Positions 51,671 through 64,000 of a stretch of DNA of 64,000 nucleotides are shown here, piece by piece. The stretch spans positions 186,001-250,000 of the IMG/VR virus record IMGVR_UViG_3300040801_001224; one strand, 5' to 3'. Within the stretch, counting starts at the first letter, position 1, and each line of letters opens with the position of its first letter. A model generated the notes under the pieces. That model saw only the letters and a program-made list of their open reading frames with translations. It did not search any database and was not told where the DNA came from. The translations under genes and the position numbers were made by a program.

Positions 51671-51708
51671 TGGTAAATACTATGGAGCTTGTTGCGTAAA
51701 GGAGTATT

Positions 51709-52668: not shown

Positions 52669-52885
52669 GTTGTTAAATATATTAAAAGCTAAAACTCCAG
52701 AAGAAGTTGATAAAGCCAGTAGAGAGTTTATGTCAAATGTGGGTACAGATCAGATATCATTAAAGCGAGCTAAAGTTAGAAAAGTTAGAAAAGTTAGAAA
52801 AGCAAATGATGAATATGTATATGATGTGGGTATGAAAAATAAAAATCATCCATGGTTTTTTGCGAATAATATCCTTGTCCACAAC
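52658..52885 (+). mobile_element. Split intein C-fragment (blocks F and G)
   Basis: YVYD (block F), LVHN (block G), +1 Ser. Confidence 0.9.
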
Positions 52886-53770
52886 TCAGTTTATTTTTCA
52901 GCATACCCAGCGTATAAAGAGCAGATTGAAGCAGGTGAACTGGAATGGAATAAAGAAAAGGCTGTTGAACTGTATGATGAAATATCTTCAATGGTGAGTG
53001 ACACGTTCCCGCAGTTTATGTTGGATGCGTTTAATGTACCCTATGCGAGATCTGAAGGTGTTATTGCCGCAGGTCGTGAAATTGTAGCAAGCACAGGCTT
53101 GTTTATTAAGAAGAAACGTTATGCGGCAATGGTGTATGACAACGAGGGTGAACGCAAGGATGTAGATGGTAAGCCGGGTAAAATGAAAGCAATGGGCCTG
53201 GATCTAAGACGTGCTGACACACCGGTATTCGTACAAGAGTTCCTATCCAAAGTATTAACAATGGTGTTAACAGAACACACTGAAGAAGAATGTATCCAGT
53301 TCATCAAGGAATTTAAGGAATTGTATGACGACATGGCACCCTGGGAAAAGGGTACACCCAAAGCAGTAAACGGCGTAACCAAGTACATGAATAAGATTGA
53401 AGAACGTAATAAGCAGATTGCCCGTGGCCAAACGCCTAAGACTCTAATGGTTCCCGGTCACGTACAAGGCAGTTTCAACTGGAACTTATTGCGTGAGCGT
53501 CACAATGACTTACACAGAGCAAAGATCACAGACGGATCAAAGGTGATATTGTGTTACTTAAAGGATAATGATTATAAATTTAAGAACATTGCTTATCCTG
53601 TAGAAGAAAACCATTTGCCAGACTGGTTCTTAGAACTTCCATTTGATGAAGAACGCATGATGGAGAGTGGTGTGGATAAGAAAATTGAGAATATGCTTGG
53701 CGTAATGAAGTGGGATTTAAGCAAAGCAAGTAAACAAGCAGATCACTTTGGATCACTATTTGAATTTTAG
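52658..53770 (+). CDS. Split intein C-fragment fused to family B DNA polymerase C-terminal half
   Basis: YVYDVGM..FFANNILVHN|SVYF then IKKKRYA, MGLDLRRADTP; alternative start ATG 52730. Confidence 0.93.
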   Translation: MKDKLLNILKAKTPEEVDKASREFMSNVGTDQISLKRAKVRKVRKVRKANDEYVYDVGMKNKNHPWFFANNILVHNSVYFSAYPAYKEQIEAGELEWNKEKAVELYDEISSMVSDTFPQFMLDAFNVPYARSEGVIAAGREIVASTGLFIKKKRYAAMVYDNEGERKDVDGKPGKMKAMGLDLRRADTPVFVQEFLSKVLTMVLTEHTEEECIQFIKEFKELYDDMAPWEKGTPKAVNGVTKYMNKIEERNKQIARGQTPKTLMVPGHVQGSFNWNLLRERHNDLHRAKITDGSKVILCYLKDNDYKFKNIAYPVEENHLPDWFLELPFDEERMMESGVDKKIENMLGVMKWDLSKASKQADHFGSLFEF

Positions 53771-54112: not shown

Positions 54113-54141
54113 TTGACACAACCAATACACTATGTTATAAT
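54113..54141 (+). promoter_or_regulatory. sigma70 promoter
   Basis: TTGACA-17-TATAAT. Confidence 0.8.
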
Positions 54142-54167: not shown

Positions 54168-54911
54168 ATGATTAGGGATAGTTTTAAAGATATTTTAGGC
54201 CATACACATGGCTTAAGTTTCATCACAGACGTAAAGTTAACAGGCGAATCAGATAAGACACGCATTGAAGCAATTGCTGAAGACAAGTCAGTTGTTTTAA
54301 TGGGTGAAACTAAAGAGCCAATTGCTGACTTAACAGACCACGTTGTTGGTTTACATCGCATGAGCGTACTGAGCGGTTACATTAGTGGCCCAATGTTTGA
54401 CACAGACGAAGCAGAGATTTCTATTGTTGAGCAGACACGTGGCGACACAACCCAGCCTACAGAAATCAAGTTTGATTCTAAGAAAGGCCACAAGGCGTTT
54501 TATCGTTTTATGGGTGAAGAAGCCGCAAGCCAGATTGAAATGCCAAAGTTTAAAGGTGTTGAGTGGAATGTAGCATTCCAGCCCACAATTGATAACTTAA
54601 AAGAGCTTTCATACTTTGCTGGTATTTTAGGATCTTATGAACCTTCTTTTGAAGTACACATGCAGGATGGAAATTTACAGTTCCATATCGGTACTGGTGC
54701 AAGTGACCGCACAGTATTACCAATTGCTTCGGACTTAGAAGGTAACTTAAATACAGCACACCATTATCCATTAGCACAGGTACTGAGTATCCTTAAGTTA
54801 AGTGATAGCGAGCAGTGTGTGATCCAGTTCAGTGATGTTGGCTGTATGCAGATTACACTAGACAGTGGTTTGGGCATTTACGACTTTATCCTACCAGCAA
54901 AGATGCGATAA
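54168..54911 (+). CDS. DNA polymerase sliding clamp (gp45/PCNA-like)
   Basis: 247 aa two-domain beta-rich layout, adjacent to polB, C-terminal YDFILPA. Confidence 0.75.
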   Translation: MIRDSFKDILGHTHGLSFITDVKLTGESDKTRIEAIAEDKSVVLMGETKEPIADLTDHVVGLHRMSVLSGYISGPMFDTDEAEISIVEQTRGDTTQPTEIKFDSKKGHKAFYRFMGEEAASQIEMPKFKGVEWNVAFQPTIDNLKELSYFAGILGSYEPSFEVHMQDGNLQFHIGTGASDRTVLPIASDLEGNLNTAHHYPLAQVLSILKLSDSEQCVIQFSDVGCMQITLDSGLGIYDFILPAKMR

Positions 54912-55084
54912 TGACAGTAACAAAGTACACACCATTAATGCTTAAATGTTTTCTCAGAGGACTGAGTCCTTTTGAGTGTTATGATGTACTTTCTGAAGAA
55001 TACCCGGGAGATGAACTCCCAACGCTTGAATGTATTCGAGCGATATATCAAGGATTTGAGAAAAAAGATAATGACGAATTTTAA
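54911..55084 (+). CDS. 57-aa protein, possible helix-turn-helix
   Basis: My translation: MTVTKYTPLMLKCFLRGLSPFECYDVLSEEYPGDELPTLECIRAIYQGFEKKDNDEF; TAATG overlap with clamp stop. Confidence 0.55.
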   Translation: MTVTKYTPLMLKCFLRGLSPFECYDVLSEEYPGDELPTLECIRAIYQGFEKKDNDEF

Positions 55085-56612
55085 CGACCAATATGATGAA
55101 AGCTGGGCAAGATTTTTGCCTGCTATCTCTGGCTTTTACACATCATTGCTTGGAGCAATGGAACGAGATCCACACTACACCGATAATGACCGACCTAATG
55201 GCTTGCCAGCAGGTATGGACAAAGGCTTCGAAGGATTGGATTACCTCACTGATCAAGGATATTTCCAGTATGACTACTCGTTATATTCTGCAGGTCATGC
55301 GGCATTGGATCTCGAAAAGAGTAAAGAGAAAGAAGGCATGGTGTCACGACGTGGCGGTCACACTACTCTGGTAGGCGACTCCGGCGGATTCCAGATTGGT
55401 AAGGGCGTTATTAAATTAGACTGGGAACGTTTCTACGAAATGGAAGATGATCCAAGCACATGGATTGGCGGCAAGTATGTTGGCGATGCCGACAAAGTAC
55501 GCATGAAGATCTTACGTTGGTTAGAAGCTACCGCAGATTGGTCAATGACCCTCGATGTTCCGTCTTGGGCGGCCTTACCTCAAAACCAAGCACGTACAGG
55601 ACTAAAGAACTTTGCGGACTGTTTACGTGCTACCTTACACAACAATGACTTCTTTGTTAAGAATCGTGAGCCAGGCGCTACGAAATTCCTTAACGTGTTA
55701 CAGGGCGGTAACTGGACAGAAGCAGAAGCATGGTATCAAGCGGTTAAAGACTATCCGTTTGAGGGCTGGGCTTTTGGTGCGGCAAATGTGCGTAACATGT
55801 ATATCGCACTAAGACGTCTAATTATCATGCGTGATGAAAAGATGCTTGAAGGTAAGGATTGGATTCACATCCTGGGTATTTCTAAATTGGATTGGGCTTG
55901 TATGGCTACTGCTATTCAGCGTGAACTACGTAAGGAAGCTAATCCTAACATTACTGTTAGCTTTGATTGTGCGAGCCCTTTCATTAGTGCGGCCAACGGG
56001 CTAATGTATACTGATTCAGTTACTACTGGTGATAAGTTCGCTTACCCAATGGAGAGTTTTCCGGATCAGAAGATGTTTAAGGGCAGTAACTTGCCTTTCC
56101 CTAACAAGAGTCCTATTGGCGATATGCTGACAATGGGTGATCTCTGTGTTCGTGGTGAAGGTGACTTAAACAAGAACGGCAAGGAGACTAAAACTTCTTG
56201 GGACACATTTAGTTATGGACTTATTATGGCACACAACACTGCCAAGCACATTGAGTCTGTTATTAAGGCTAACCGGTTGGTTGATATTGAAAGTTCTTAC
56301 ATCAAGCCAGATATCAGAGACTGGAAAAAGCTTAAGTCGAGTGATAAGTCAGACAACTTGTCAGTATATGTTCCACGCAATATCTTATACTTCAACCACT
56401 TTGTTGAAGAACTATTCCAGAGTGAAAAGCCAATGGATCTATTAGAAAAGAACCATAGATTCCTGGATTCGATAAGTAACAATGTACAGCTTCAAAACAG
56501 TGATGTCGCATTCGCAAACTTGTTTGAGATGCCTGAAACAGCAAATGTTACAGCAGACACAATGGATGAAGAAAAACTGAACGAACTTGAACGATCTATT
56601 ATGGGAGATTAA
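55071..56612 (+). CDS. tRNA-guanine transglycosylase-fold protein (DpdA-like DNA 7-deazaguanine insertase)
   Basis: GDSGGFQI, MTLDVP, LNVLQGG, WIHILG, SFDCASP; next to queD and near queE; start reassigned to MTNFND. Confidence 0.85.
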   Translation: MTNFNDQYDESWARFLPAISGFYTSLLGAMERDPHYTDNDRPNGLPAGMDKGFEGLDYLTDQGYFQYDYSLYSAGHAALDLEKSKEKEGMVSRRGGHTTLVGDSGGFQIGKGVIKLDWERFYEMEDDPSTWIGGKYVGDADKVRMKILRWLEATADWSMTLDVPSWAALPQNQARTGLKNFADCLRATLHNNDFFVKNREPGATKFLNVLQGGNWTEAEAWYQAVKDYPFEGWAFGAANVRNMYIALRRLIIMRDEKMLEGKDWIHILGISKLDWACMATAIQRELRKEANPNITVSFDCASPFISAANGLMYTDSVTTGDKFAYPMESFPDQKMFKGSNLPFPNKSPIGDMLTMGDLCVRGEGDLNKNGKETKTSWDTFSYGLIMAHNTAKHIESVIKANRLVDIESSYIKPDIRDWKKLKSSDKSDNLSVYVPRNILYFNHFVEELFQSEKPMDLLEKNHRFLDSISNNVQLQNSDVAFANLFEMPETANVTADTMDEEKLNELERSIMGD

Positions 56613-56613
56613 T

Positions 56614-56892
56614 ATGAAGAAGGTAGTATTTTTGCTTGTAGTACTTCTAACACTCATGCCGGTTAAGACTGAAGCTAATGACTTTTTGGTTCTCGCAACA
56701 TCACTATGCGAGAACACTAAAGTTGACAATAAGTCAGGCATTCGTAAAGCACTCAAAAAGCATGGTGTTAAGATACGTAGAATATATGATGACATCAAGT
56801 GTAATGACATGAGTCTACATGCGTTTGCTAAAGCTAATGGTGCTGAAGAAGTAGCCGCTTGGTACGAAAAGAAGGTTAAGAAAAATCTATGA
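56614..56892 (+). CDS. Secreted DUF3718-like protein
   Basis: Signal peptide then SLCENTKVDNKSGIRKALKKHGVKIRRIYDDIKCNDMSLHAFA. Confidence 0.7.
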   Translation: MKKVVFLLVVLLTLMPVKTEANDFLVLATSLCENTKVDNKSGIRKALKKHGVKIRRIYDDIKCNDMSLHAFAKANGAEEVAAWYEKKVKKNL

Positions 56893-56908
56893 TAAAAGGA
56901 CGCAGATA

Positions 56909-57274
56909 ATGAAAACTGAAACGAAAATGATATGGGTGACTTTCCAGAAAGCTGGGATACATTATTACCCTGCGGCGAAAACTGATAAAAATCTTAATGA
57001 TGTCAGTTATCTTGGCAACAAGCATAGACATTTGTTTAAATTTAAAGTTTCCATTGAAGTATTCCATAATGATCGAGACATTGAGTTTCATCAATTTTTG
57101 AATTGGATAGAAGGGCTTTATGAATCACAAGTACTGTCATTAGATAGTCGCAGTTGTGAAATGATTTCAGATGAACTAGCTGAGAAAATTACAAGCAAGT
57201 ATGCAGGAAGAAAATTAGTCATAGAGGTCTCCGAAGACGGAGAATGCGGAAGTACAATCGAGTATTGTTCTTAA
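56909..57274 (+). CDS. queD: QueD-like 6-carboxy-tetrahydropterin synthase (T-fold)
   Basis: HYYP..HRHLF.F.V..HNDRDIEF..SCEM..EVSEDGECG. Confidence 0.8.
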   Translation: MKTETKMIWVTFQKAGIHYYPAAKTDKNLNDVSYLGNKHRHLFKFKVSIEVFHNDRDIEFHQFLNWIEGLYESQVLSLDSRSCEMISDELAEKITSKYAGRKLVIEVSEDGECGSTIEYCS

Positions 57275-58042
57275 AATTTCATTATCATTAGAGTTATTAA
57301 TATAAGATTCAGACATTCGCAGAATTCGGTATCCGAAGTCATTTGCTACATACGAACAAGTTGTATCCCAGTTTTTCACTTCGATACTTGAGTGCCAATA
57401 GTCACCATCGACTTCTATGATTAAGTTATGATCAGGTAAGAGAAAGTCATATAGATGTCTAAAGAATAGTTTGTTTCTCCTATGCTCTTTAGTTTGTATT
57501 AAAAATTGAAATTCATGACGTATATTATTATGGATGAGGATTTCTAATATTCTTTTTTCAATAGAAGTCATTTTAAACTTATTCGATTTTCGTGTTTCAG
57601 TAATTGTTTTGGACAACATTTCTCTATGCTTATCAGTTCGAACATAACGTCCCATTTTTGATGTGTCTGATTTGGGCTTTCTCATTTTTTTCCGAATTTC
57701 TGGATCGTTTGTGAATTTCCCTTCAAAATTTGGGTTCTTTTCGCCTTGAGATAGTCCTAATCTAATTCTCGTTTCTGATATTTTGGATCCGACCCGTTCC
57801 TTATATGATTTTGTTTTTCTTATATTCGAGTTATTGCCTTTTATTGACATTGATTTCATATGAGCTTCTTTGGAACCTGGTTTCTGTCTCCACGTTTCTT
57901 CTCTCGACTTTTGCTGTTTTTTTATAACTCCTGGGCATTTCGTTACCTTGTATTCACATCTGAATACCTTCGTATTCACGGATTGAAATTTTGCTGGAGA
58001 CCCACAATACTCACATACCTTTCCTTCAATAAAATCTGTCAT
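57215..58042 (-). CDS. Free-standing Vsr/DUF559-like homing endonuclease with NUMOD3-like segments
   Basis: YDFLLPDHNLIIEVDGDYWH; CEYCG zinc knuckle; antisense, AT-rich; late box at 58079-58086. Confidence 0.85.
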   Translation of the reverse strand: MTDFIEGKVCEYCGSPAKFQSVNTKVFRCEYKVTKCPGVIKKQQKSREETWRQKPGSKEAHMKSMSIKGNNSNIRKTKSYKERVGSKISETRIRLGLSQGEKNPNFEGKFTNDPEIRKKMRKPKSDTSKMGRYVRTDKHREMLSKTITETRKSNKFKMTSIEKRILEILIHNNIRHEFQFLIQTKEHRRNKLFFRHLYDFLLPDHNLIIEVDGDYWHSSIEVKNWDTTCSYVANDFGYRILRMSESYINNSNDNEILRTILDCTSAFSVFGDLYD

Positions 58043-58151
58043 GTAGTTTACCTATTAATTCTAGTTCGCTATCATTGTTATTTATCTTTTTTTAGGTTAT
58101 AATTAAATCAATATTGAACAGACATAGAGTATACTCCAGATAAATAACAGT

Positions 58152-58808
58152 ATGAAGAGGTATATAGGAAAAATAACACCATTCGCATATGCGGCATTTG
58201 CGGCAATTGTTTCAATGTGGCTATTGGCAATGTTCATGTCTATTTCTCAAGAAATTCAGTTGTCAATTACATTATTAATATCCTTCCTCATCGGTTTAAT
58301 GGCTTTCAACATAGCAGGAGCTATAGATGCCAGAAGTTATAAAAAAATGACTCGTGATCCAGAATCCGGAGCTCGGACAAGGCAATATTTCATTGATATA
58401 TCAGAACGTGAAATATCAAGGAGCATAAGAAGCCAGACACCAATTTATGCGATTGCGTTTAAGTTGGACCAATACGAAGAAATTCATAGTGAAGCTCCCA
58501 AATGTATTGCTACTATCTTTGAGCAGATGACTATACATTTAAGAAAAAATACACGAAAAAATGATGTCCTAGCTAGACTAAGTGATAATGCCTTTGTACT
58601 ATTGCTGTCAGACGACACTAAAGAAGAACATACCGGAATGCTTGCTGAACGAGTTCAGAATACTGTGAACTCACTAATGTGTACCGCAAATAATAAAACA
58701 TACCAAAATCTAACAGCCACTACATTCGTTGAACCATATGATATGGATAACGACATGAGCTCTGAAGACTTTACAACTCGCCTAGAAAACATCTTAGAAA
58801 ACGCTTGA
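58152..58808 (+). CDS. Two-TM membrane protein with degenerate GGDEF domain
   Basis: DPESGARTRQYF, RKND-x5-SDNAF (intact I-site, dead A-site); leaderless after TAAATA at 58141. Confidence 0.8.
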   Translation: MKRYIGKITPFAYAAFAAIVSMWLLAMFMSISQEIQLSITLLISFLIGLMAFNIAGAIDARSYKKMTRDPESGARTRQYFIDISEREISRSIRSQTPIYAIAFKLDQYEEIHSEAPKCIATIFEQMTIHLRKNTRKNDVLARLSDNAFVLLLSDDTKEEHTGMLAERVQNTVNSLMCTANNKTYQNLTATTFVEPYDMDNDMSSEDFTTRLENILENA

Positions 58809-58833
58809 CAAACACACCAATTTATAGTATAAT
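58805..58833 (+). promoter_or_regulatory. sigma70 promoter
   Basis: TTGACA-17-TATAAT. Confidence 0.8.
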
Positions 58834-58860
58834 GACTATAACTATAAATACAGGTGACTA

Positions 58861-59961
58861 ATGAACACAATTTTTATTATACCTATCGAACCTATCGATA
58901 CACGTTATACCCGTCATTGGTATGAACACATACCGGAATTACTTAAAGCCGCTGGAGATGACCGATACAGAGTCATAACAATTGATGGCACAGACGTCCC
59001 ACCAGTTCCTACTCCAGGCGCATTCTTAGACTTTGGCGCAACGAATATTTATAAGAGTTCACAGCTCATTAAAATTGCTGACAAGTTCCGCCGTGGTGAG
59101 GTTAAGGATGGTGATAAGTTTTTATTTACTGATGCGTGGAATACAAGTATCTTACAAGTAAAGTATATGAGTGAACTATTGGGCGTTAAAACTGAGTTAC
59201 ATGGCTTATGGCATGCTGGTTCTTATGATCCACAAGATTTCTTAGGACGTTTAATCAAGGACAAACGTTGGACAAATAACACGGAAAAGGCAATCTTTTA
59301 TTCATTGGATAAGAATTGGTTTGCTACTGAGTTTCATGTTGAAATGTTTATGGCTAACGTATTTTTAGAAACTGATGTATTTAAAAATGATCAAGACTTA
59401 TCACACAGTGACAGGACAAGGCGTATTGGCATAACTGGTTGGCCAATGGAATACATGACTGAAATGTTAGAGCGTTATGAAGCTCCAAAGAAAGACCTCA
59501 TACTATTTCCGCATCGTCTAGCACCTGAGAAGCAGTTGGATATCTTCAAGGACTTAGAAAAGGAACTGCCCGAATACGAATGGGTTGTCTGTCAGGAAAA
59601 GAAACTGACCAAGAACGAATACCATAAATTATTGGGTAGAGCTAAGATGGTGTTTAGTGCTAACTTACAGGAAACCCTGGGTATTAGTGTTCCTGAAGGA
59701 ATGGCGACAGGCGCTATACCCTGTGTTCCAGACCGTTTAAGTTATGCGGAAATGTACAGAGATGAATGGAAGTATCCAAGTGAATGGACTGAAAGCTTTG
59801 ATTCATATACACGATACAAAGAGAAACTGGTTTCTAGAATTAAAGAACATATGGAATCATATGATGAAAAAATGCGTGAAGTTATTTATGATGACTACAA
59901 AGTTCTACATGAAAAATTCTTTAGCGCAGGACCATTAGTAGAGAGTTTAGTTAGTGAGTAA
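58861..59961 (+). CDS. GT-B (GT4-like) glycosyltransferase
   Basis: ILFPHRLAPEKQ, ANLQETLGISVPEG (E-x7-E), VPDRLSYAE. Confidence 0.85.
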   Translation: MNTIFIIPIEPIDTRYTRHWYEHIPELLKAAGDDRYRVITIDGTDVPPVPTPGAFLDFGATNIYKSSQLIKIADKFRRGEVKDGDKFLFTDAWNTSILQVKYMSELLGVKTELHGLWHAGSYDPQDFLGRLIKDKRWTNNTEKAIFYSLDKNWFATEFHVEMFMANVFLETDVFKNDQDLSHSDRTRRIGITGWPMEYMTEMLERYEAPKKDLILFPHRLAPEKQLDIFKDLEKELPEYEWVVCQEKKLTKNEYHKLLGRAKMVFSANLQETLGISVPEGMATGAIPCVPDRLSYAEMYRDEWKYPSEWTESFDSYTRYKEKLVSRIKEHMESYDEKMREVIYDDYKVLHEKFFSAGPLVESLVSE

Positions 59962-60889
59962 AATTTTAGTAACTGGTGGAAGTGGCTTCATAGGCACTTC
60001 AGTCTGCAATATGTTGGTTAAGGAAGGCTATGAAGTCCATAACTTAGATCGTGTTAAGAAAGTCATTCCTGGCACCAAGCAACATTGGATGGATTTAGGC
60101 AATACAGAACTGCTCGATCAGATCCTATGCGAACATCAGTATGACGCAGTAATACATCTAGCTTCAGAACATGAAGTTGGGAGGAGTATTGTTGAACCAG
60201 AACTCTATTATGAAAACAACGTTGTTAATACGATTAGCTTGCTTCGTCTCATGAAGAAGCATGGCATTGACAAATTAATTATGAGTAGCAGTAGCTCTGT
60301 GTATGGTGACGCTGATTGTTATCCAACACATGAAGAAATGCCAAAAAAGCCATTGAGTCCTTATGCGAGAACTAAGGCTATTATGGAAGATATGCTACAA
60401 GACTTTGATCGTGCTTATGGCATTCAATATACAGCACTAAGATATTTTAATGCTGTAGGCGCAGGGTATACGCAGGAGCCTGCAACACATATTATGCCCA
60501 AGCTATGTCAGAAAGTTTTATCGGGTGAGACATTCAATGTTTATGGTGGTGATTACGATACTGCTGATGGAACGTGTGAACGTGATTATACTCATTTAGA
60601 AGATATAGCAGAAGCGCATATATTGGCGCTGAATTATTTGTTTAATGGTGGCACCAGCCAGATACTAAACATTGGCGAAGGGTATACTTGGAGTGTACTT
60701 GAAATATTAGAAAAATTTGAAGAAGTTACTGGTGAAGAAGTAAAATACGAATTCACTGACAGGAGAGAAGGTGATGTTATGACGACATCTTCCGATTCGA
60801 GCAAAGCAAAGGACTTACTTGGTTGGGAACCTTCTTATAATATAGAAGACATGATAAAAGACGCATGGGAATGGGAGAAAAACAAATGA
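59954..60889 (+). CDS. galE: UDP-glucose 4-epimerase
   Basis: VTGGSGFIG, SSSSSVYG, YARTK, LRYFN, RDYTH, RREGD. Confidence 0.93.
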   Translation: MSKILVTGGSGFIGTSVCNMLVKEGYEVHNLDRVKKVIPGTKQHWMDLGNTELLDQILCEHQYDAVIHLASEHEVGRSIVEPELYYENNVVNTISLLRLMKKHGIDKLIMSSSSSVYGDADCYPTHEEMPKKPLSPYARTKAIMEDMLQDFDRAYGIQYTALRYFNAVGAGYTQEPATHIMPKLCQKVLSGETFNVYGGDYDTADGTCERDYTHLEDIAEAHILALNYLFNGGTSQILNIGEGYTWSVLEILEKFEEVTGEEVKYEFTDRREGDVMTTSSDSSKAKDLLGWEPSYNIEDMIKDAWEWEKNK

Positions 60890-61353
60890 CCGTCAAGAAA
60901 GACATAAGCTACGAACAGATTGAAGATTACGTTAATCTACTCATTAAAGAGATTGAAGCTAAAGAATGGAAGCCAGACTTAATTGTGGGACTTACTCGTG
61001 GTGGCCTATTGCCAGCAGTACGCCTAAGTCATAAGATGGGTATTCCGATGCAGTCGCTCCAGTGGACCACAAGAGATCATACAAATAGAAATTGTCATGA
61101 TGCGGCATTGGCGGAGGACATGGTTGACGGTATGAAAATACTCATCGTTGATGATATTTGTGACAGTGGTGAAACATTTAAGACCCTTATCAAAGACATG
61201 AACACAAGTGTAGTGGATGATATTGCCTGGCATGAACAAGTACGTTTCGCGGCATTGTTACATAAGAATGGATCACATTTCCATACGGATTTTAAAGCAA
61301 CTACAGTATTAGACGAAAGCATCTGGTGGGTATTTCCCTGGGAGAAAGAATAA
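60886..61353 (+). CDS. Type I phosphoribosyltransferase (Gpt/Hpt-like)
   Basis: VGLTRGG, ILIVDDICDSGET, WWVFPWE. Confidence 0.92.
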   Translation: MTVKKDISYEQIEDYVNLLIKEIEAKEWKPDLIVGLTRGGLLPAVRLSHKMGIPMQSLQWTTRDHTNRNCHDAALAEDMVDGMKILIVDDICDSGETFKTLIKDMNTSVVDDIAWHEQVRFAALLHKNGSHFHTDFKATTVLDESIWWVFPWEKE

Positions 61354-61553
61354 TGGCAGAATCAATAGCCACAATACAATTACTATTAACGCCTGAAGAA
61401 TTAGAAACGTTATATAAAGTAATAGGACATGTTAGCGATGCTGACTTCGAAAAGAAGTTTAAGTTAGATGATGATCAAGTAGAAATTATACATGATATCA
61501 TAAACGAAGTATTTTCATATGAGATGTTATGGAGTGAAGAATGGATTCTATAG
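61353..61553 (+). CDS. Small hypothetical protein
   Basis: TAATG overlap; start MAESIA. Confidence 0.6.
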   Translation: MAESIATIQLLLTPEELETLYKVIGHVSDADFEKKFKLDDDQVEIIHDIINEVFSYEMLWSEEWIL

Positions 61554-61801
61554 ATGATTTTGAAGAACGATTATCTGAGAATTATAATCCTGAAGTAGGT
61601 GACTATTTGATGCCTGCAAGGGATAATGGAATGAATTGGGAGTCTAGTAGAATTATTGACAAGAATAAACCGCACATGTATAAGGTTAATTATGATGATA
61701 GATGGTACGCGGTTTTACCTAAAGATATACAATCTTTCAATTATACTGAATGTGGAAATAAAATGTATAAAATAATTGCTATTACACAGATGTCGAGATA
61801 A
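61541..61801 (+). CDS. Hypothetical protein
   Basis: 86-aa ORF in operon. Confidence 0.65.
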   Translation: MDSIDDFEERLSENYNPEVGDYLMPARDNGMNWESSRIIDKNKPHMYKVNYDDRWYAVLPKDIQSFNYTECGNKMYKIIAITQMSR

Positions 61802-61810
61802 GGAAATAAA

Positions 61811-62155
61811 ATGAAGTTTGAAGATATACCATGGAAAGACATAGTTGTTGAGACTAAGAACTTCGTCATATTTAACGACGGGTTTCCGGTTAGCGAAGGG
61901 CATGAGTTAATTGTGCCACGAGACCCAAAGAATGTGCGTCATTTAGAAGAGTGTATGTTGACAGCATATAAACGTGGCCGAGATTTAATTCGGAGAGGGT
62001 TGGCCACAGGTTTCAATGTTGGCATGAATTATGGCGAATCTGCTGGCCAGACTGTTCCATATCCACATATACACTTAATTCCACGTAGAGATGGTGATAC
62101 TGAAAACCCACGTGGTGGGATCCGTAACTGTATTCCAGGCAAGGGAGATTATTAA
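61811..62155 (+). CDS. HIT-family nucleotide hydrolase
   Basis: DGFPVSEGHELIVP, GFNVGMNYGESAGQTVPYPHIHLIPR. Confidence 0.93.
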   Translation: MKFEDIPWKDIVVETKNFVIFNDGFPVSEGHELIVPRDPKNVRHLEECMLTAYKRGRDLIRRGLATGFNVGMNYGESAGQTVPYPHIHLIPRRDGDTENPRGGIRNCIPGKGDY

Positions 62156-62334
62156 TGTCAGAACCCAGGACATTTGACCATGAAGGTGGCACTGGTATTA
62201 GTGCTTCTCCCATGTTAGCAAAGAAAGTTGCCGTATCTATTACGGAAGAACAAGCAAGGGAGTTGCTTGGGTTAGTTGATAGGGTAGCCGAATTAGAAAG
62301 ACGAGTTAAGGAGCTATCTGATGAAAAGAGTTGA
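62155..62334 (+). CDS. 59-aa coiled-coil hypothetical protein
   Basis: My translation MSEPRTFDHE...VAELERRVKELSDEKS; TAATG overlap. Confidence 0.55.
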   Translation: MSEPRTFDHEGGTGISASPMLAKKVAVSITEEQARELLGLVDRVAELERRVKELSDEKS

Positions 62335-62560
62335 GCGTTGGGCACCGGTATTTCTAATACTGCCTAAGAAAATATTAGGAGAATGGTATTGGCTCAGACG
62401 TGTGATGCGTAAGGGTAATGTTTATATGACTGAAAAAGACTATTTGGGTATGGTTGAATCTCAAGAGCCAACTAAAGAGGATATATCAAAATTGTATCCG
62501 TACACTGCGGATGACATATTAGAAATGGAGGACGATGATGAGTGTGAACAAAGACAATAG
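62321..62560 (+). CDS. Trp-rich paralog 5 (divergent)
   Basis: VFLILPKKILGEWYWLRRV. Confidence 0.6.
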   Translation: MKRVERWAPVFLILPKKILGEWYWLRRVMRKGNVYMTEKDYLGMVESQEPTKEDISKLYPYTADDILEMEDDDECEQRQ

Positions 62561-62945
62561 TCTTGAAGCTATCAGAAAGAAAATCAAAGATTTCAATAAG
62601 AAGTATAGTGAAGAACGTACAACTTGGGCATCAAGCGGAACAAATACTGATCCATTTGGCCTAGGATCTGGCGGTAACGCTGGTTGGCCATATGGTAATG
62701 ATCCTTATATAGGATATCCACAGTATCCAGGGAACAGTGGATGGGATAGTTCAGGAACCGGAACTGTTGATATGACTGCCCTTCAACTCACACAGATCAT
62801 GGCACGCCTAGACGCTATTGAAAAACGTTTGAGGATTATGGAAGATGCTGATCCAGATCTAGTGGAAGCACTCAAGGAAGCTTATGACCATTATAAATTC
62901 ATTGAAAAACTTTGTGAAGATTCCCTGGCGGGGAGGGAAGACTAA
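62535..62945 (+). CDS. Hypothetical protein with G/P/Y-rich linker and C-terminal coiled coil
   Basis: 136 aa; ALKEAYDHYKFIEKLC. Confidence 0.7.
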   Translation: MMSVNKDNSLEAIRKKIKDFNKKYSEERTTWASSGTNTDPFGLGSGGNAGWPYGNDPYIGYPQYPGNSGWDSSGTGTVDMTALQLTQIMARLDAIEKRLRIMEDADPDLVEALKEAYDHYKFIEKLCEDSLAGRED

Positions 62946-62946
62946 C

Positions 62947-63393
62947 ATGTCAGCCAAGCAATCTAGATATACTGTATTGGGACAAAATACTTGGAATAGT
63001 AGCAATAGCGGCACTGTAACAATAAATACAGGAACAACTACACCAGCCGGAACTGTATCTATCGGCACTACTAGTCAAAGACATCTGGCGATAGAGCCAA
63101 AAGATGATGAAGATAAGTTTTTTGAAAAACTGGGTGGCGGAGAATTAGCCTTAGAGATTTTGTCCTTTGATTTTGATCTAGTTAATAAAACAGCTAGGAT
63201 GGTATGTAGCTCAGCTAATAATATCGATATTGAATTATTTGTTGAAAGACTGGAAGGTTACAATGTTATTATGGGTGGGAATGTGATGGGTATTGATAAA
63301 GTGACAAGCGCATCGGCTAGGACAACAACATCAATATACGATGAAATAGAATGGACAATTGAATTTAAATATAACATTGACAAGCCACGTTAA
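62947..63393 (+). CDS. Hypothetical protein
   Basis: Start reassigned to MSAKQS (SD GGGAGG). Confidence 0.6.
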   Translation: MSAKQSRYTVLGQNTWNSSNSGTVTINTGTTTPAGTVSIGTTSQRHLAIEPKDDEDKFFEKLGGGELALEILSFDFDLVNKTARMVCSSANNIDIELFVERLEGYNVIMGGNVMGIDKVTSASARTTTSIYDEIEWTIEFKYNIDKPR

Positions 63394-63406
63394 CATATGT
63401 TATAAT
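63377..63406 (+). promoter_or_regulatory. sigma70 promoter for queE
   Basis: TTGACA-18-TATAAT. Confidence 0.7.
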
Positions 63407-63426
63407 ACGCTATTAATGGAGAAAGT

Positions 63427-64000
63427 ATGAACAAGCATTATTATTCAGAAATATTTAGAAGTCTACAAGGCGAAGGCACATACACTGGTGCTAACAGCTT
63501 GTGGATTCGTTGGTTTCATTGTAACCTACAGTGTGACGGATTTGGACAAGATGATCCCACTAATCCAGACAGTTATGAACTACCCTACAAAGACTATGAT
63601 TTGATCAACACAAAGACAGTTGAAGATTTGCCAGTATTTGACAAAGGCTGTGATAGCTCATACACATGGAGTAAAAAGTACAAGCACTTAATGGCACACG
63701 AAGATGCGGTAACTATTGTTGACAAGCTAGAAGACACACTACGTGGCCCAGGTAATCCAAATGGCACGTTCCTACATCCAGTCAGTCATCAGGAAACCCA
63801 TATGTGTTTTACCGGTGGTGAGCCCATGCTTAAAAAGAATCAATTAGCTATTGTGGAAACAATGGAAGAGTTTGCTAAAAGACGCAATGCTCCACGTTTT
63901 GTGACTGTTGAAACTAATGGTACACAGAAACTTACAGATGATATGCTCAAACTTATAGGCGGGCATAACAGTTTATTTCCTTCAGGCACTACTAGTGAAT
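63427..64000 (+). CDS. queE: QueE 7-carboxy-7-deazaguanine synthase (radical SAM), 3'-truncated
   Basis: My translation: YSEIFRSLQGEG.YTG..WIRWFHCNLQC...GCDS...CFTGGEPML...TVETNGT. Confidence 0.92.
   Translation, partial: MNKHYYSEIFRSLQGEGTYTGANSLWIRWFHCNLQCDGFGQDDPTNPDSYELPYKDYDLINTKTVEDLPVFDKGCDSSYTWSKKYKHLMAHEDAVTIVDKLEDTLRGPGNPNGTFLHPVSHQETHMCFTGGEPMLKKNQLAIVETMEEFAKRRNAPRFVTVETNGTQKLTDDMLKLIGGHNSLFPSGTTSE

What the first reader, a model, noticed from the sequence alone, without database searches (positions are those of the whole stretch)
55071..64000. 7-deazaguanine pathway interleaved with glycosyltransferase, GalE, PRTase and HIT: candidate new (sugar-bearing or pre-replicative) guanine hypermodification
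Seen: a large (513-aa) TGT-fold gene and QueD directly after PolB and the clamp, then a GT4-like enzyme, GalE, a Gpt-like PRTase and HIT in one sigma70 operon, then QueE. No QueC, QueF or FolE occurs within the window, though they may lie beyond the edge. Established: FolE-QueD-QueE make CDG, and phage DpdA enzymes insert 7-deazaguanines into DNA to block restriction. Inference: (a) the base may stay at CDG or be glycosylated using a GalE-made UDP-sugar, giving a glyco-deazaguanine; (b) the PRTase, HIT and the MazG/HAD enzymes elsewhere could route the base through the nucleotide pool for incorporation by the phage PolB instead of, or besides, base exchange.
Basis: partly seen in the sequence, partly recalled or inferred. 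Interest (0 to 1): 0.78.

Follow-up and report, generated by a model that had tools for sequence, protein, structure and literature searches.

The report
Sugar-linked 7-deazaguanine DNA modification module
This jumbo phage carries a widespread, undescribed gene set in which the enzymes that put 7-deazaguanine into DNA always travel with a sugar-adding enzyme, which suggests a sugar-bearing guanine substitute not yet seen in any genome.

Summary
The genes are real, but two labels change. The 121-aa 'QueD' is DpdL, the QueD paralogue proposed to decarboxylate 7-carboxy-7-deazaguanine (CDG). It has the motif LxxxHRHxF and is 67% identical to ACP17 DpdL. The true QueD and FolE lie 3.6-5 kb upstream of the window. 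There is no QueF and no canonical QueC.

The 513-aa protein matches no Pfam, PHROG or NCBIfam model. Its AlphaFold model matches only TGT, QTRT and DpdA structures. It belongs to a family of at least 4,949 unannotated proteins.

The window is syntenic with Pseudomonas phage PA5oct. PA5oct DNA carries a modified G of unknown chemistry.

The GT4 glycosyltransferase sits beside DpdL:
- in 79 of 80 viral contigs seeded on the glycosyltransferase;
- in 44 of 45 contigs seeded on DpdL, counting two GT4-like types;
- in seven cultured phage groups (at least three classified taxa, and two DpdA types).

Sugar-nucleotide enzymes vary around it: GalE here, others elsewhere. A Gpt-type phosphoribosyltransferase (37 of 45 complete modules) and a HIT protein (23 of 45) are also conserved.

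Best reading: CDG is converted to 7-deazaguanine, inserted by base exchange, and glycosylated. The phosphoribosyltransferase probably recycles the released guanine. The sugar adduct is inferred, not shown. A pre-replicative route is not supported but not excluded.

The parts
49301..51670 (+). Family-B DNA polymerase, N-terminal part (exonuclease and polymerase domains), with an intein-splicing-like domain at its C-terminal end. Marks the upstream border of the conserved block.
   Evidence: Pfam PF00136, PF03104 and PF14890. 52% identical to PA5oct DNA polymerase.
51709..52668 (+). Homing-endonuclease-like ORF that splits the polymerase gene.
   Evidence: Weak PF18741 REase hit. PA5oct has a Hef-like homing endonuclease at the same place.
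52658..53770 (+). Family-B DNA polymerase, C-terminal part.
   Evidence: PF00136. 54-58% identical to the second PA5oct polymerase ORF.
54113..54141 (+). Perfect sigma-70 consensus promoter that starts the operon holding the 247-aa gene, the DpdA-like gene and DpdL.
   Evidence: 12 of 12 match. 14 such sites in the window against 0.09 expected.
54168..54911 (+). Conserved 247-aa protein. Its homologue is annotated as a virion structural protein in PA5oct and as a sliding clamp in Phosso.
   Evidence: No Pfam or NCBIfam hit. 47% identical to PA5oct EST35_0314. Present in 68 of 80 related loci.
55071..56612 (+). Divergent TGT-fold protein, the candidate DNA 7-deazaguanine transglycosylase (DpdA-like, a distant relative of DpdA3). 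An alternative ATG at 54981 would give 543 aa.
   Evidence: AlphaFold2 pLDDT 84. The only significant Foldseek PDB hits are TGT, QTRT and DpdA 7ui4. D103-S-G-G-x-Q108, D162 and D299 are invariant. hhalign against ACP17-type DpdA3: 87% probability, E 3.6e-6. 40.6% identical to PA5oct EST35_0316. The Vibrio phage 2.275.O homologue sits in the same locus as QueF, YhhQ, QueC, Gat and FolE.
56614..56892 (+). DUF3718 small protein. An insertion that is not part of the module.
   Evidence: PF12514, 55 bits. Found in 0 of 80 and 0 of 78 related loci.
56909..57274 (+). DpdL, a QueD paralogue proposed to decarboxylate CDG to 7-deazaguanine.
   Evidence: Motif L-x3-H-R-H-x-F in place of C-x3-H-G-H (definition in PMC10516641). 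67% identical to ACP17 DpdL and 31% to phiST DpdL. Matches phrog_17812. No PTPS Pfam hit.
57215..58042 (-). HNH/DUF559 homing endonuclease on the opposite strand. An insertion that is not part of the module.
   Evidence: PF04480 and phrog_559.
58152..58808 (+). GGDEF-domain protein. An accessory gene that is not part of the module.
   Evidence: PF00990 and TIGR00254. Present in 1 of 80 related loci.
58805..58833 (+). Perfect sigma-70 consensus promoter that starts the operon running from the glycosyltransferase through GalE and the phosphoribosyltransferase to HIT.
   Evidence: 12 of 12 match.
58861..59961 (+). GT4-type retaining glycosyltransferase (GT-B fold). It is the conserved partner of DpdL and the candidate enzyme that adds a sugar to the deazaguanine.
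   Evidence: AlphaFold2 pLDDT 87. Foldseek top hits are BshA, glycogen synthase, GlgM, MshA and PglA. tRNA-queuosine mannosyltransferase is at rank 18. R219/K224 and E271-x7-E279 are invariant. 44% identical to PA5oct EST35_0317, 48% to Phosso and 36% to ACP17. DpdL is adjacent in 79 of 80 loci.
59954..60889 (+). UDP-glucose 4-epimerase GalE, the likely supplier of the UDP-hexose donor. This slot of the module is variable.
   Evidence: TIGR01179, 337 bits against a 262-bit cut-off. Bona fide GalE recurs after the second GT4-like subtype in relatives. PA5oct has a 172-aa epimerase-like remnant at the same position.
60865..61353 (+). Small Gpt-type purine phosphoribosyltransferase, a conserved module member.
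   Evidence: PF00156, 67 bits. The nearest solved structures are P. horikoshii purine PRT 1vdm, Sulfolobus GpT and E. coli XGPRT. Present in 37 of 45 complete modules. Also present in PA5oct and next to QueE in cyanophage BUCT-ZZ01.
61811..62155 (+). HIT-family nucleotide hydrolase or transferase, a frequent module member. Its role is unknown.
   Evidence: PF01230, 48 bits. PDB HIT, Fhit and Ap4A phosphorylase hits. Present in 23 of 45 complete modules. Y-x-H-x-H motif plus a conserved C-terminal GG-R..IPGKG.Y.
63377..63406 (+). Perfect sigma-70 consensus promoter in front of QueE.
   Evidence: 12 of 12 match.
63427..64000 (+). 5' part of a divergent QueE (CDG synthase). The full gene is 305 aa and ends 344 bases past the window edge.
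   Evidence: N-terminal matches to four NCBIfam QueE models, all below their cut-offs. 32% identical to the PA5oct gene annotated as 7-carboxy-7-deazaguanine synthase, and 39% to the Vibrio phage 2.275.O homologue.

Best explanation
The stretch is the core of a DNA guanine-replacement module shared by PA5oct-like jumbo phages. I give each step with my own probability.

(1) FolE and QueD, encoded 3.6-5 kb upstream of the window, and the divergent QueE turn GTP into 7-carboxy-7-deazaguanine (CDG). Gene identities are shown; about 0.9.

(2) With no QueC or QueF in the module, DpdL converts CDG to 7-deazaguanine. The 513-aa TGT-fold protein then swaps this base for guanine in finished DNA. Inferred from homology, fold and gene context; about 0.7.

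(3) The GT4 glycosyltransferase almost never separates from DpdL. It adds a hexose from a UDP-sugar, which GalE interconverts in this phage. The acceptor would be the deazaguanine, either as the free base just before insertion or on the DNA. The product would be a sugar-bearing deazaguanine. Inferred from co-occurrence only; about 0.5. The attachment atom is unknown; C7 or N2 are the candidates.

(4) The Gpt-type phosphoribosyltransferase returns the guanine released by base exchange to GMP, and hence to GTP. This would feed FolE and pull the exchange forward. Inference; about 0.45.

The HIT protein belongs to the module, but I cannot assign it a step.
For: Synteny. The order PolB, 247-aa gene, DpdA-like, glycosyltransferase, DpdL, phosphoribosyltransferase, QueE matches PA5oct.

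Experimental hints from the literature.
[quoted passage not shown] Its authors infer a modified G of unknown structure (PMC12191111).
- Expressing ACP17 dpdL with its dpdA alone in E. coli gave no dDG. [quoted passage not shown] In ACP17 the glycosyltransferase lies between those two genes.

Gene identities.
- The TGT fold and catalytic motifs of the 513-aa protein.
- Its homologue in Vibrio phage 2.275.O lies in the same locus as QueF, QueC, Gat, YhhQ and FolE.
- DpdL identity.
- The glycosyltransferase has the GT-B fold, the R/K pair and the E-x7-E signature.

Co-occurrence.
- DpdL is present in 79 of 80 loci seeded on the glycosyltransferase, and the DpdA-like gene in 74 of 80.
- A GT4-like gene lies next to DpdL in 44 of 45 DpdL-seeded loci with enough flank. 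The median glycosyltransferase-DpdL distance is 282 bp.
- The same pair occurs in Busanvirus ACP17, Kyanoviridae BUCT-ZZ01, and in X1, BUDD, BCSR5 and Phosso. These use two different DpdA types.
- Vibrio phage 2.275.O has the same DpdA-like family with the QueC/QueF route. Its locus has neither DpdL nor the glycosyltransferase.

Sugar-nucleotide genes in the same slot.
- GalE in this phage.
- GalE in 12 of 45 DpdL-seeded relatives.
- A GFO/MocA oxidoreductase plus an ADH-like gene in 20 of 45 complete modules.
- An epimerase remnant in PA5oct.

No competing acceptor. The genome has no thymidylate-synthase-like hydroxymethylase, so the usual hydroxymethyl-pyrimidine acceptor for phage DNA glycosyltransferases is absent.

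Precedents. HuiG glycosylates the 2-amino group of a free 7-deazapurine (PMC7439116). The GT4 enzyme QTMAN glycosylates queuosine in tRNA.

Phosphoribosyltransferase. Its nearest structures are 6-oxopurine enzymes. The Asp that corresponds to HGPRT D137 is at least 95% conserved in 38 viral homologues.
Against: - No chemistry has been measured for this phage or for any glycosyltransferase-bearing relative.
- 7-Deazaguanine has no hydroxyl or side-chain amine. A sugar would need a C-glycosidic bond at C7 or an N-glycosidic bond at N2. I know of no GT4 enzyme shown to make a C-glycoside.
- Phages proven to carry plain dDG (phiST and its relatives) have DpdL without a glycosyltransferase. DpdL therefore does not need the glycosyltransferase.
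- DpdL's decarboxylase activity is itself only proposed (PMC10516641).
- The 513-aa protein fails Pfam TGT. It shows no BLASTP similarity to ACP17 DpdA3.
- The glycosyltransferase and the transglycosylase families are both acidic, with median pI about 5.4. That gives no sign of DNA binding.
- Most of the viral loci sampled belong to one broad clade (PolB 42-54% identical). Much of the co-occurrence is therefore shared ancestry.
- Rhizobium phage RHph_I1_18 has a close DpdL (56% identity) and no glycosyltransferase nearby.
Confidence: 0.5

Rival explanations
1. Plain 7-deazaguanine (dDG), or dCDG, is the final DNA base, as in Cellulophaga phage phiST. The glycosyltransferase, GalE and related genes serve another target and merely share the early or middle replication operons. 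That target could be a phage or host protein, a surface glycan, or a cofactor.
For: - phiST, phi19:2 and phi13:1 carry dDG, and have DpdL but no glycosyltransferase (PMC10516641).
- A vibriophage with full dDG replacement has been reported (bioRxiv 10.1101/2025.10.29.685425).
- 7-Deazaguanine offers no obvious acceptor atom for a sugar.
- The glycosyltransferase's nearest structural neighbours are ordinary small-molecule and glycan GT4 enzymes.
Against: - The glycosyltransferase lies within a median of 282 bp of DpdL.
- It stays there across seven cultured phage groups that use two DpdA types.
- It is missing from the locus of a phage that uses the same DpdA-like family with the QueC/QueF route.
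- ACP17 DpdL plus DpdA without the glycosyltransferase made no dDG in E. coli.
Confidence: 0.25
2. Pre-replicative route. The phosphoribosyltransferase acts like TubE and couples CDG or 7-deazaguanine to PRPP. DpdL acts on the base or on the nucleotide. Kinases and ribonucleotide reductase then make 7-deaza-dGTP, which the phage PolB incorporates. HIT and MazG would tidy the nucleotide pool. The TGT-fold protein would have a secondary or repair role.
For: - TubE uses PRPP and CDG in the QueC-less tubercidin pathway, which also has a decarboxylase and a GMP reductase (PMC6112128; bioRxiv 10.64898/2026.04.15.718813).
- The phosphoribosyltransferase is conserved in 37 of 45 complete modules and sits next to QueE in BUCT-ZZ01.
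- A bona fide GMP reductase lies in the module of a few relatives.
- A MazG-like gene exists at window 8706-9200.
- The module sits directly after PolB.
Against: - A TGT-fold transglycosylase is present in 74 of 80 loci. Cui et al. argue that every 7-deazaguanine phage with a DpdA modifies DNA after replication.
- The PA5oct modification was inferred to be limited to GA/GG contexts, not total replacement.
- The phosphoribosyltransferase resembles guanine/xanthine enzymes and keeps the Asp that I expect to contact N7, which a 7-deaza substrate lacks.
- 8 of 45 complete modules lack the phosphoribosyltransferase.
- The MazG-like gene lies 46 kb away from the module.
Confidence: 0.12
3. The glycosyltransferase and the PTPS-like DpdL make a glycosylated pterin or another small molecule from the FolE product, as cyanobacterial BGluT does with tetrahydrobiopterin. 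They would not make a DNA base.
For: - UDP-glucose:tetrahydrobiopterin glucosyltransferase (5zer) is among the significant fold matches, at rank 44 with E 2.7e-6.
- DpdL is a T-fold PTPS/QueD paralogue, and FolE is in the module.
- Many of the glycosyltransferase's top structural neighbours have small-molecule acceptors.
Against: - QueE and a TGT-fold enzyme are constant companions.
- DpdL lacks the catalytic Cys of PTPS and QueD.
- BGluT is no closer than dozens of other GT4 enzymes.
- PA5oct DNA is demonstrably modified at G.
Confidence: 0.05

Closest known systems
Cellulophaga phage phiST dDG system (FolE, QueD, QueE, DpdL, DpdA3; Cui, Hutinet et al., NAR 2023, PMC10516641)
   Same: FolE, QueD and QueE with no QueC. 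A DpdL with the LxxxHRHxF motif (31% identical). A TGT-superfamily transglycosylase next to the replication genes.
   Different: phiST has a 259-aa DpdA3, a MazG and a small kinase-like ATPase, and no glycosyltransferase, phosphoribosyltransferase or HIT. The transglycosylase here is 513 aa and only remotely related. A GT4 enzyme, sugar-nucleotide genes, a phosphoribosyltransferase and HIT are added.
Acidovorax phage ACP17 dpdA-dpdL cluster (Busanvirus)
   Same: The order DpdA, GT4 glycosyltransferase, DpdL, QueE, with FolE and QueD nearby. DpdL is 67% identical and the glycosyltransferase 36%.
   Different: ACP17 uses a 424-aa DpdA3 with no BLASTP similarity to the 513-aa protein. It has the unknown 170-aa partner that this phage lacks. 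It has no phosphoribosyltransferase, HIT or GalE in the locus. The glycosyltransferase is not mentioned in the paper that tested its dpdA and dpdL (0 occurrences of 'glycosyl').
Pseudomonas phage PA5oct (Arenbergviridae, Wroclawvirus), modified G of unknown structure (PMC12191111)
   Same: The closest cultured relative. It has the same gene order from the split PolB to the RNase H/FEN gene: DpdA-like 41% identical, glycosyltransferase 44%, DpdL 47%, phosphoribosyltransferase 25%, QueE 32%.
   Different: PA5oct has the glycosyltransferase before DpdL and only a 172-aa epimerase-like remnant in place of GalE. It has no HIT, GGDEF or DUF3718 in the locus. Only its QueE and a PTPS have been pointed out in print. 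The transglycosylase and the glycosyltransferase are annotated as hypothetical.
T4-type DNA glucosylation (alpha/beta-glucosyltransferases on 5-hydroxymethylcytosine)
   Same: A phage GT-B enzyme that would use a UDP-sugar to decorate an already non-canonical DNA base for protection against host nucleases.
   Different: The acceptor would be a purine analogue with no hydroxymethyl group. The genome has no hydroxymethylase. The T4 enzymes are not among the 50 best fold matches listed in the PDB search.
tRNA-queuosine alpha-mannosyltransferase QTMAN/GTDC1 and huimycin HuiG
   Same: Glycosyltransferases that glycosylate a 7-deazaguanine derivative. QTMAN (GT4) acts on a nucleic acid and appears among the fold matches (rank 18). 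HuiG acts on a free 7-deazapurine base at N2 (PMC7439116).
   Different: QTMAN's acceptor is the cyclopentenediol of queuosine, which is absent here. HuiG works in actinomycete secondary metabolism on an O-methylated preQ0. No sequence-level relationship was detected beyond the GT4 fold.
Tubercidin pathway TubE (CDG phosphoribosyltransferase)
   Same: A QueC-less CDG pathway combined with a type-I phosphoribosyltransferase and a decarboxylase. A GMP reductase is present in some phage relatives.
   Different: The phage enzyme is a 162-aa Gpt-like protein. The decarboxylase candidate is a T-fold protein rather than a UbiD enzyme. The phage module always carries a transglycosylase.

Membership tests
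TGT / DpdA superfamily (513-aa protein) | TIM-barrel TGT fold | tested here: met
   The nine significant Foldseek PDB hits are all TGT, QTRT1/2 or DpdA 7ui4, at probability 1.00 and TM by target 0.38-0.52. Model pLDDT 84.
TGT / DpdA superfamily (513-aa protein) | Catalytic Asp in a D-S-G-G-x-Q motif, plus further conserved Asp residues | tested here: met
   D103, S104, G105, G106, Q108, D162 and D299 are invariant in 24 homologues. hhalign aligns them with the DpdA3 motifs.
TGT / DpdA superfamily (513-aa protein) | Match to Pfam PF01702 (TGT) | tested here: not met
   No hit at E 0.01. No PF01702 match anywhere in the genome at E 1. A PDB profile search also found nothing.
TGT / DpdA superfamily (513-aa protein) | Encoded with 7-deazaguanine synthesis genes | tested here: met
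   Found with DpdL, FolE and QueE in most of the 80 loci. Found in one locus with QueF, QueC, Gat, YhhQ and FolE in Vibrio phage 2.275.O.
TGT / DpdA superfamily (513-aa protein) | Exchanges guanine in DNA for a 7-deazaguanine | not testable with these tools
   Needs a biochemical or genetic assay.
DpdA3 subfamily | Sequence similarity to ACP17- or phiST-type DpdA3 | tested here: inconclusive
   BLASTP E 0.17. Profile-profile comparison gives 87% probability, E 3.6e-6, over 280 columns. I treat it as a separate, remotely related subfamily.
DpdL (CDG decarboxylase candidate) | LxxxHRHxF in place of QueD's CxxxHGH | tested here: met
   L35, H39, R40, H41 and F43. L, H, H and F are invariant in 9 DpdL sequences. 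The motif is defined in PMC10516641.
DpdL (CDG decarboxylase candidate) | Homology to the named DpdL of phiST and ACP17 | tested here: met
   67% identity to ACP17. 31% identity to phiST, E 2e-5.
DpdL (CDG decarboxylase candidate) | Occurs with FolE, QueD, QueE and a DpdA, but without QueC | tested here: met
   The only QueC-like gene is a divergent 200-aa protein 25 kb away, whose best NCBIfam match is QatC and which PA5oct lacks.
DpdL (CDG decarboxylase candidate) | Decarboxylates CDG | not testable with these tools
   Also unproven in the literature: heterologous expression gave no dDG.
GT4 retaining glycosyltransferases | GT-B two-Rossmann fold | tested here: met
   Model pLDDT 87. 136 PDB hits at E <= 0.001, led by BshA, glycogen synthase, GlgM and MshA, at TM about 0.6.
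GT4 retaining glycosyltransferases | E-x7-E motif and an R/K pair that binds the donor diphosphate (features recalled from my knowledge of the family) | tested here: met
   R219, K224, E271 and E279 are invariant in 24 homologues.
GT4 retaining glycosyltransferases | Pfam Glycos_transf_1 above its gathering score | tested here: not met
   17.5 bits against a 26.4-bit cut-off. A few homologues carry PF00534 in the precomputed table.
GT4 retaining glycosyltransferases | Identity of donor and acceptor | not testable with these tools
   Needs enzyme assays.
UDP-glucose 4-epimerase GalE | NCBIfam equivalog TIGR01179 above its cut-off | tested here: met
   336.8 bits against 262.3.
Xanthine-guanine phosphoribosyltransferase (Gpt) | Type-I PRT domain with a PRPP loop | tested here: met
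   PF00156, 67.5 bits. The VDDI.D.G.T motif is conserved in 38 homologues.
Xanthine-guanine phosphoribosyltransferase (Gpt) | NCBIfam PRK09177 above its cut-off | tested here: not met
   46 bits against 138. It is Gpt-like, not an equivalog.
HIT family | HIT domain and the H-x-H-x-H-x-x motif | tested here: inconclusive
   PF01230, 48 bits, above the cut-off. The motif reads Y-P-H-I-H-L-I, so the first His is replaced by Tyr while the second and third are conserved.
QueE (CDG synthase) | A curated QueE model above its cut-off | tested here: not met
   The best is TIGR04508 at 35 bits against 240, and only the N-terminal 30 residues match. No Pfam hit at E 0.001.
QueE (CDG synthase) | Homology to phage genes annotated as QueE within deazaguanine clusters | tested here: met
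   32% identity to PA5oct, 32% to X1, 31% to BUCT-ZZ01 and 39% to Vibrio 2.275.O.

The most novel reading that the evidence does not exclude
PA5oct-like jumbo phages, ACP17-like phages, some T4-like cyanophages and thousands of uncultured relatives replace guanine with a glycosylated 7-deazaguanine. DpdL would unmask the electron-rich C7 (or leave N2 free). The dedicated GT4 enzyme would then attach a hexose whose identity is diversified by swappable sugar-nucleotide genes. This would be the first sugar-bearing purine analogue found in a genome, and possibly the first C-glycosidic DNA base modification. A built-in guanine-to-GTP recycling loop through the Gpt-like enzyme would supply it.
Probability: 0.42. 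Interest if true: 0.9.

Novelty: new variant of a known kind. Interest (0 to 1): 0.78.

Why it matters
Eight 7-deazaguanine DNA bases are known, and none carries a sugar. As far as I know, the known DNA sugars all sit on pyrimidines. A glycosylated deazaguanine would be a new class of DNA hypermodification.

The two core families are large but unannotated. The capped searches returned at least 4,949 relatives of the transglycosylase and at least 8,000 of the glycosyltransferase. So the chemistry would be common in nature, not a curiosity.

The finding turns an open experimental question into a short list of genes to delete and masses to look for. That question is the identity of the modified G of the therapeutic-candidate phage PA5oct. 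It also offers a reason why ACP17 DpdL plus DpdA failed in E. coli.

It matters for three practical areas:
- defence and counter-defence, including END nucleases and anti-deazaguanine glycosylases;
- restriction-resistant DNA for phage therapy;
- sequencing artefacts in jumbo phage genomes.

Tried and rejected
- Pfam, PHROG and NCBIfam scans of the 513-aa protein gave nothing. A PDB profile search also gave nothing. Only structure prediction identified the fold.
- Megablast of the region against the phage collection found no near relative.
I rebuilt the alignment without those rows.
- I first took the PP-loop gene at genome 179533-180279 for QueC. It is NAD synthase.
- I considered the QueC-like 200-aa gene at genome 275375-275977 as the missing QueC. 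I set it aside because PA5oct and all 158 viral loci lack it, and its best curated match is QatC.
- I tested whether the gene after the Vibrio phage 2.275.O transglycosylase is the glycosyltransferase. It is not.
- I looked for a specific structural link of the glycosyltransferase to DNA glycosyltransferases or to QTMAN. QTMAN is only one of many equally good GT4 matches.
- Overall charge gave no discrimination. Both the glycosyltransferase and the transglycosylase families are acidic.
- A BFVD viral fold search was not accepted by the tool at the time I tried.
- The supplementary tables of PMC10516641 are not held, so I could not see whether PA5oct was listed there.
- Literature searches for DpdA with glycosyltransferase or phosphoribosyltransferase, and for glycosylated 7-deazaguanine, found no description of this module.

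Full report
WHAT THE WINDOW IS

The window is bases 186001-250000 of a 328,096-bp viral contig with direct terminal repeats, that is, a complete jumbo phage genome. It has no near relative by megablast in the phage collection. Protein searches show that the finding's region is syntenic with Pseudomonas phage PA5oct (Arenbergviridae). More distantly it resembles Sinorhizobium phage Phosso and Vibrio phage 2.275.O. The shared order is:
- a family-B polymerase split by a homing endonuclease;
- a conserved 247-aa protein;
- a roughly 500-aa hypothetical protein;
- a glycosyltransferase-like protein;
- a roughly 120-aa protein;
- a phosphoribosyltransferase;
- QueE;
- a 200-aa protein;
- an RNase H/FEN nuclease.

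CHECK OF THE OBSERVATION

All ORFs exist as described.
- GalE is unambiguous: TIGR01179, 337 bits against a 262-bit cut-off.
- The phosphoribosyltransferase has PF00156 at 67 bits. Its nearest solved structures are archaeal purine PRTs and E. coli XGPRT.
- The HIT protein has PF01230 at 48 bits.
- The last ORF runs off the window and is 305 aa in full. It matches QueE models only over its first 30 or so residues, below their cut-offs. It is 32% identical to the PA5oct gene annotated as 7-carboxy-7-deazaguanine synthase.
Perfect TTGACA-N17/18-TATAAT promoters stand at 54113, at 58805 (28 bases before the glycosyltransferase start) and at 63377 (before QueE). The window has 14 such sites against 0.09 expected.
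- Three genes in the stretch do not belong to the module: a DUF3718 gene, a minus-strand HNH/DUF559 homing endonuclease and a GGDEF protein. They are absent from almost all relatives.

THE TGT-FOLD PROTEIN

The 513-aa protein has no hit in Pfam, PHROGs or NCBIfam. PF01702 is not found anywhere in the genome.

Its family is large. At least 4,949 proteins scored E <= 0.001 among the 8,000 candidates examined. None of those listed carries a Pfam domain or an informative name.

An AlphaFold2 model built on 24 homologues is confident, with pLDDT 84 and pTM 0.84. Its only significant PDB matches are bacterial TGT, eukaryotic QTRT1/2 and the DNA preQ0 insertase DpdA (7ui4), at E 1e-8 to 8e-5. Generic TIM barrels follow with E of 0.007 and above.

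D103-S-G-G-x-Q108, D162 and D299 are invariant. A profile-profile comparison with ACP17-type DpdA3 gives 87% probability and E 3.6e-6 over 280 columns. It aligns those motifs. Plain BLASTP finds nothing.

In Vibrio phage 2.275.O, the homologue sits in one locus with QueF, a YhhQ-type transporter, QueC, a Gat domain protein and FolE.

I conclude that it is a transglycosylase of the DpdA kind, in a subfamily only remotely related to DpdA3. Its activity is inferred.

THE 'QueD' IS DpdL

The 121-aa protein has no PTPS hit. It carries L-x3-H-R-H-x-F where QueD has C-x3-H-G-H. Cui, Hutinet and colleagues define DpdL, their proposed CDG decarboxylase, by exactly this change (PMC10516641). The protein is 67% identical to the ACP17 DpdL they tested and 31% to phiST DpdL. 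The motif is invariant across nine DpdLs.

The real pathway genes lie just outside the window:
- FolE at genome 180923-181600 (PF01227, 210 bits);
- a true PTPS/QueD at genome 181887-182378 (60 bits).

The PP-loop gene next to them is NAD synthase, not QueC. There is no QueF. A divergent QueC-like 200-aa gene lies 25 kb downstream. It is absent from PA5oct and from all 158 related viral loci, and its best curated match is QatC. I do not count it as part of the module.

The pathway therefore most likely runs GTP to CDG to 7-deazaguanine, not to preQ0.

THE GLYCOSYLTRANSFERASE AND ITS COMPANY

The 366-aa protein only grazes Glycos_transf_1 (17.5 bits). Its model (pLDDT 87) is a GT-B fold. Its best matches are GT4 enzymes: BshA, glycogen synthase, GlgM, MshA and PglA. 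R219, K224 and E271-x7-E279 are invariant. The family is again very large, with all 8,000 scored candidates significant.

The important result is where this gene lies. Seven cultured phage groups have the glycosyltransferase within 4 kb of DpdL, and usually adjacent:
- the PA5oct group;
- Phosso;
- ACP17 (Busanvirus);
- Xanthomonas phage X1;
- Xanthomonas phage BUDD;
- Burkholderia phage BCSR5;
- the T4-like cyanophage BUCT-ZZ01 (Kyanoviridae).

ACP17, X1 and BUCT-ZZ01 use the ACP17-type DpdA3, not the 513-aa family. The glycosyltransferase therefore follows DpdL, not a particular transglycosylase.

Among 80 IMG/VR loci seeded on the glycosyltransferase:
- DpdL is present in 79;
- the 513-aa family in 74;
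- FolE in 60;
- QueE in 49;
- the phosphoribosyltransferase in 49;
- HIT in 30.
Many of these loci are cut by contig ends. The usual order is PolB, 247-aa gene, transglycosylase, DpdL, glycosyltransferase, then FolE, the phosphoribosyltransferase and HIT in varying order, then QueE, the 200-aa gene and FEN. In the 45 loci that span the whole module, the phosphoribosyltransferase is in 37 and HIT in 23.

Seeding on DpdL instead gave 45 loci with enough flank, and 44 have a GT4-like gene beside DpdL. In 26 it is this glycosyltransferase type. In the rest it is a second GT4-like type of about 390 aa. That second type is followed by a bona fide GalE in 12 loci.

Other sugar-type genes occupy the same slot. 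A GFO/IDH/MocA oxidoreductase with an ADH-like protein is in 20 of 45 complete modules. A 172-aa epimerase-like remnant is in PA5oct.

Conversely, Vibrio phage 2.275.O uses the same transglycosylase family with the QueC/QueF route. Its locus has neither DpdL nor the glycosyltransferase.

Phages with DpdL but no glycosyltransferase also exist. They are the phiST group, Bakedbeans, Ahp1, D479, MA9V-3 and RHph_I1_18. phiST and two of its relatives are the ones proven to carry plain dDG.

One caveat applies to these counts. The IMG/VR samples are the best 80 matches, and most belong to one broad clade, with PolB 42-54% identical. The large counts partly reflect shared ancestry. The cross-lineage cases are the independent evidence.

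MECHANISM

Shown:
- the gene identities listed above;
- the conserved neighbourhoods.

Taken from the literature:
- PA5oct DNA resists five restriction enzymes in a pattern its authors read as a modified G in GA/GG. The chemistry is unknown (PMC12191111).
- A glycosyltransferase, HuiG, glycosylates the 2-amino group of a free 7-deazapurine (PMC7439116).
- QTMAN, a GT4 enzyme, glycosylates queuosine in tRNA.

Inferred:
- DpdL yields 7-deazaguanine.
- The glycosyltransferase adds a hexose to it. GalE supplies UDP-Gal or UDP-Glc here, and the donor differs between relatives.
- The transglycosylase places the base in DNA.

I cannot say whether the sugar goes on before or after insertion. I also cannot say which atom it is attached to. 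The tight DpdL-glycosyltransferase adjacency favours the free base weakly. So does the prediction that DpdL acts on the free base, and so do the small-molecule acceptors of the nearest GT4 structures. C7, which decarboxylation would free, and N2, the HuiG precedent, are the two chemically conceivable sites. This is my own reasoning.

The genome has no thymidylate-synthase-like hydroxymethylase. The classical hydroxymethyl-pyrimidine acceptor of phage DNA glycosyltransferases is therefore absent.

THE PHOSPHORIBOSYLTRANSFERASE AND HIT

The phosphoribosyltransferase is conserved in PA5oct, in most complete modules, and independently next to QueE in BUCT-ZZ01, at 30% identity. It resembles guanine/xanthine enzymes. 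It keeps the Asp of the D-x-G-x-T loop in at least 95% of 38 homologues. In HGPRT that Asp contacts N7 of the purine; I state this from my own knowledge of the enzyme.

I therefore prefer a recycling role. Base exchange releases one guanine per modified site, and the pathway consumes one GTP per site. Converting that guanine to GMP would close the loop and remove the competing base.

The alternative is a TubE-like CDG phosphoribosyltransferase feeding a nucleotide route. It has a real precedent in the QueC-less tubercidin pathway (PMC6112128). It is hinted at by a true GMP reductase in the module of a few relatives. Three observations argue against it:
- a transglycosylase is always present;
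- the PA5oct pattern appears motif-limited;
- Cui et al. conclude that DpdA-bearing viruses modify DNA after replication.

A MazG-like gene exists in the window at 8706-9200, but far from the module.

I cannot assign HIT a step. It keeps the second and third His of the triad and has a conserved C-terminal motif.

COMPARISON WITH WHAT IS KNOWN, AND NOVELTY

The system is a member of the DpdA/DpdL world described in 2019-2023. It differs in three ways:
- It uses an undescribed, Pfam-invisible transglycosylase subfamily.
- It has an obligatory GT4 partner of DpdL, with interchangeable sugar-nucleotide genes.
- It carries a purine phosphoribosyltransferase and often a HIT protein.

The paper that defined DpdL never mentions a glycosyltransferase or a phosphoribosyltransferase. 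Searches that combined DpdA, deazaguanine, phage and either enzyme found no description of this association. I rate it a new variant of a known kind. If the adduct is confirmed, the base itself would be new.

VERDICT

The sugar hypothesis is strengthened to roughly even odds. The hypothesis that the base stays at CDG is weakened, and so is the pre-replicative hypothesis. PA5oct and ACP17 are cultured, so the decisive experiments are straightforward.

Noticed in passing
window 49301-53770: The family-B DNA polymerase is in two ORFs in the same frame, separated by a 319-aa endonuclease-like ORF in another frame. The first ORF ends with an intein-splicing-like domain (PF14890). PA5oct has a Hef-like homing endonuclease at the same spot. 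It is unclear whether this is an intein, a split intein or a free-standing homing endonuclease.
   Followed up: partly
window, 14 sites (for example 326, 3107, 5131, 7204, 8651, 16088, 18844, 19635, 27080, 48532, 54113, 58805, 63377): Perfect TTGACA-N17/18-TATAAT promoters occur 14 times against 0.09 expected, 13 of them on the + strand. Many share a CCACTT-like spacer. The phage appears to rely on idealised host sigma-70 promoters for these genes.
   Followed up: partly
L013-L092 (for example L054:984-1505), L011:5236-5718 (ACP17): A conserved protein of about 173 aa with no family match lies between the transglycosylase and DpdL in 45 of 45 complete uncultured modules. In ACP17 it lies just before DpdA3. 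It is absent from this genome, PA5oct, Phosso and Vibrio phage 2.275.O. Conserved residues include TLFV.G, an invariant His, a PY pair, YN, DD and NPGVW.
   Followed up: partly
L174:12096-13217 and about six other related loci: A bona fide GMP reductase (PRK05096, 555 bits) sits inside the deazaguanine module of a few relatives. This recalls TubD of the tubercidin pathway.
   Followed up: partly
L172:9356-10621: A second radical-SAM protein of 421 aa lies between DpdL and the glycosyltransferase in one relative, and is present in about three other loci.
   Followed up: no
genome 275375-275977 (L008:7375-7977), 25 kb past the window end: A 200-aa PP-loop protein with a QueC-like C-terminal Cys cluster. 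Its best curated match is the QatC anti-phage QueC-like protein. Homologues occur in Mycobacterium phage DS6A, Saccharomonospora phage PIS 136, an Erwinia phage and a Burkholderia phage, but not in PA5oct.
   Followed up: partly
window 58152-58808 and genome 253817-255694 (L001:4817-6694): The phage encodes a GGDEF diguanylate-cyclase-like protein and, nearby, a 625-aa hybrid sensor with PAS, histidine kinase and receiver domains. Host-type signalling genes are unusual in a phage replication region.
   Followed up: no
genome 178319-185445 (L007), just upstream of the window: A calcineurin-like phosphoesterase, an NAD synthase (NadE) and a ClpX-like AAA+ ATPase flank FolE and QueD.
   Followed up: no
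L093 (phiST), L179 (Vibrio phage D479), L180 (MA9V-3): DpdL modules that lack the glycosyltransferase instead pair DpdL with a small nucleotide-kinase-like ATPase and a short transglycosylase candidate of about 260-285 aa. In MA9V-3 the DpdL match lies at the C-terminal end of a 293-aa ORF, which may be a fusion.
   Followed up: no
window 8706-9200: A MazG-like pyrophosphohydrolase gene (PF03819, 22.8 bits, just over the cut-off).
   Followed up: partly
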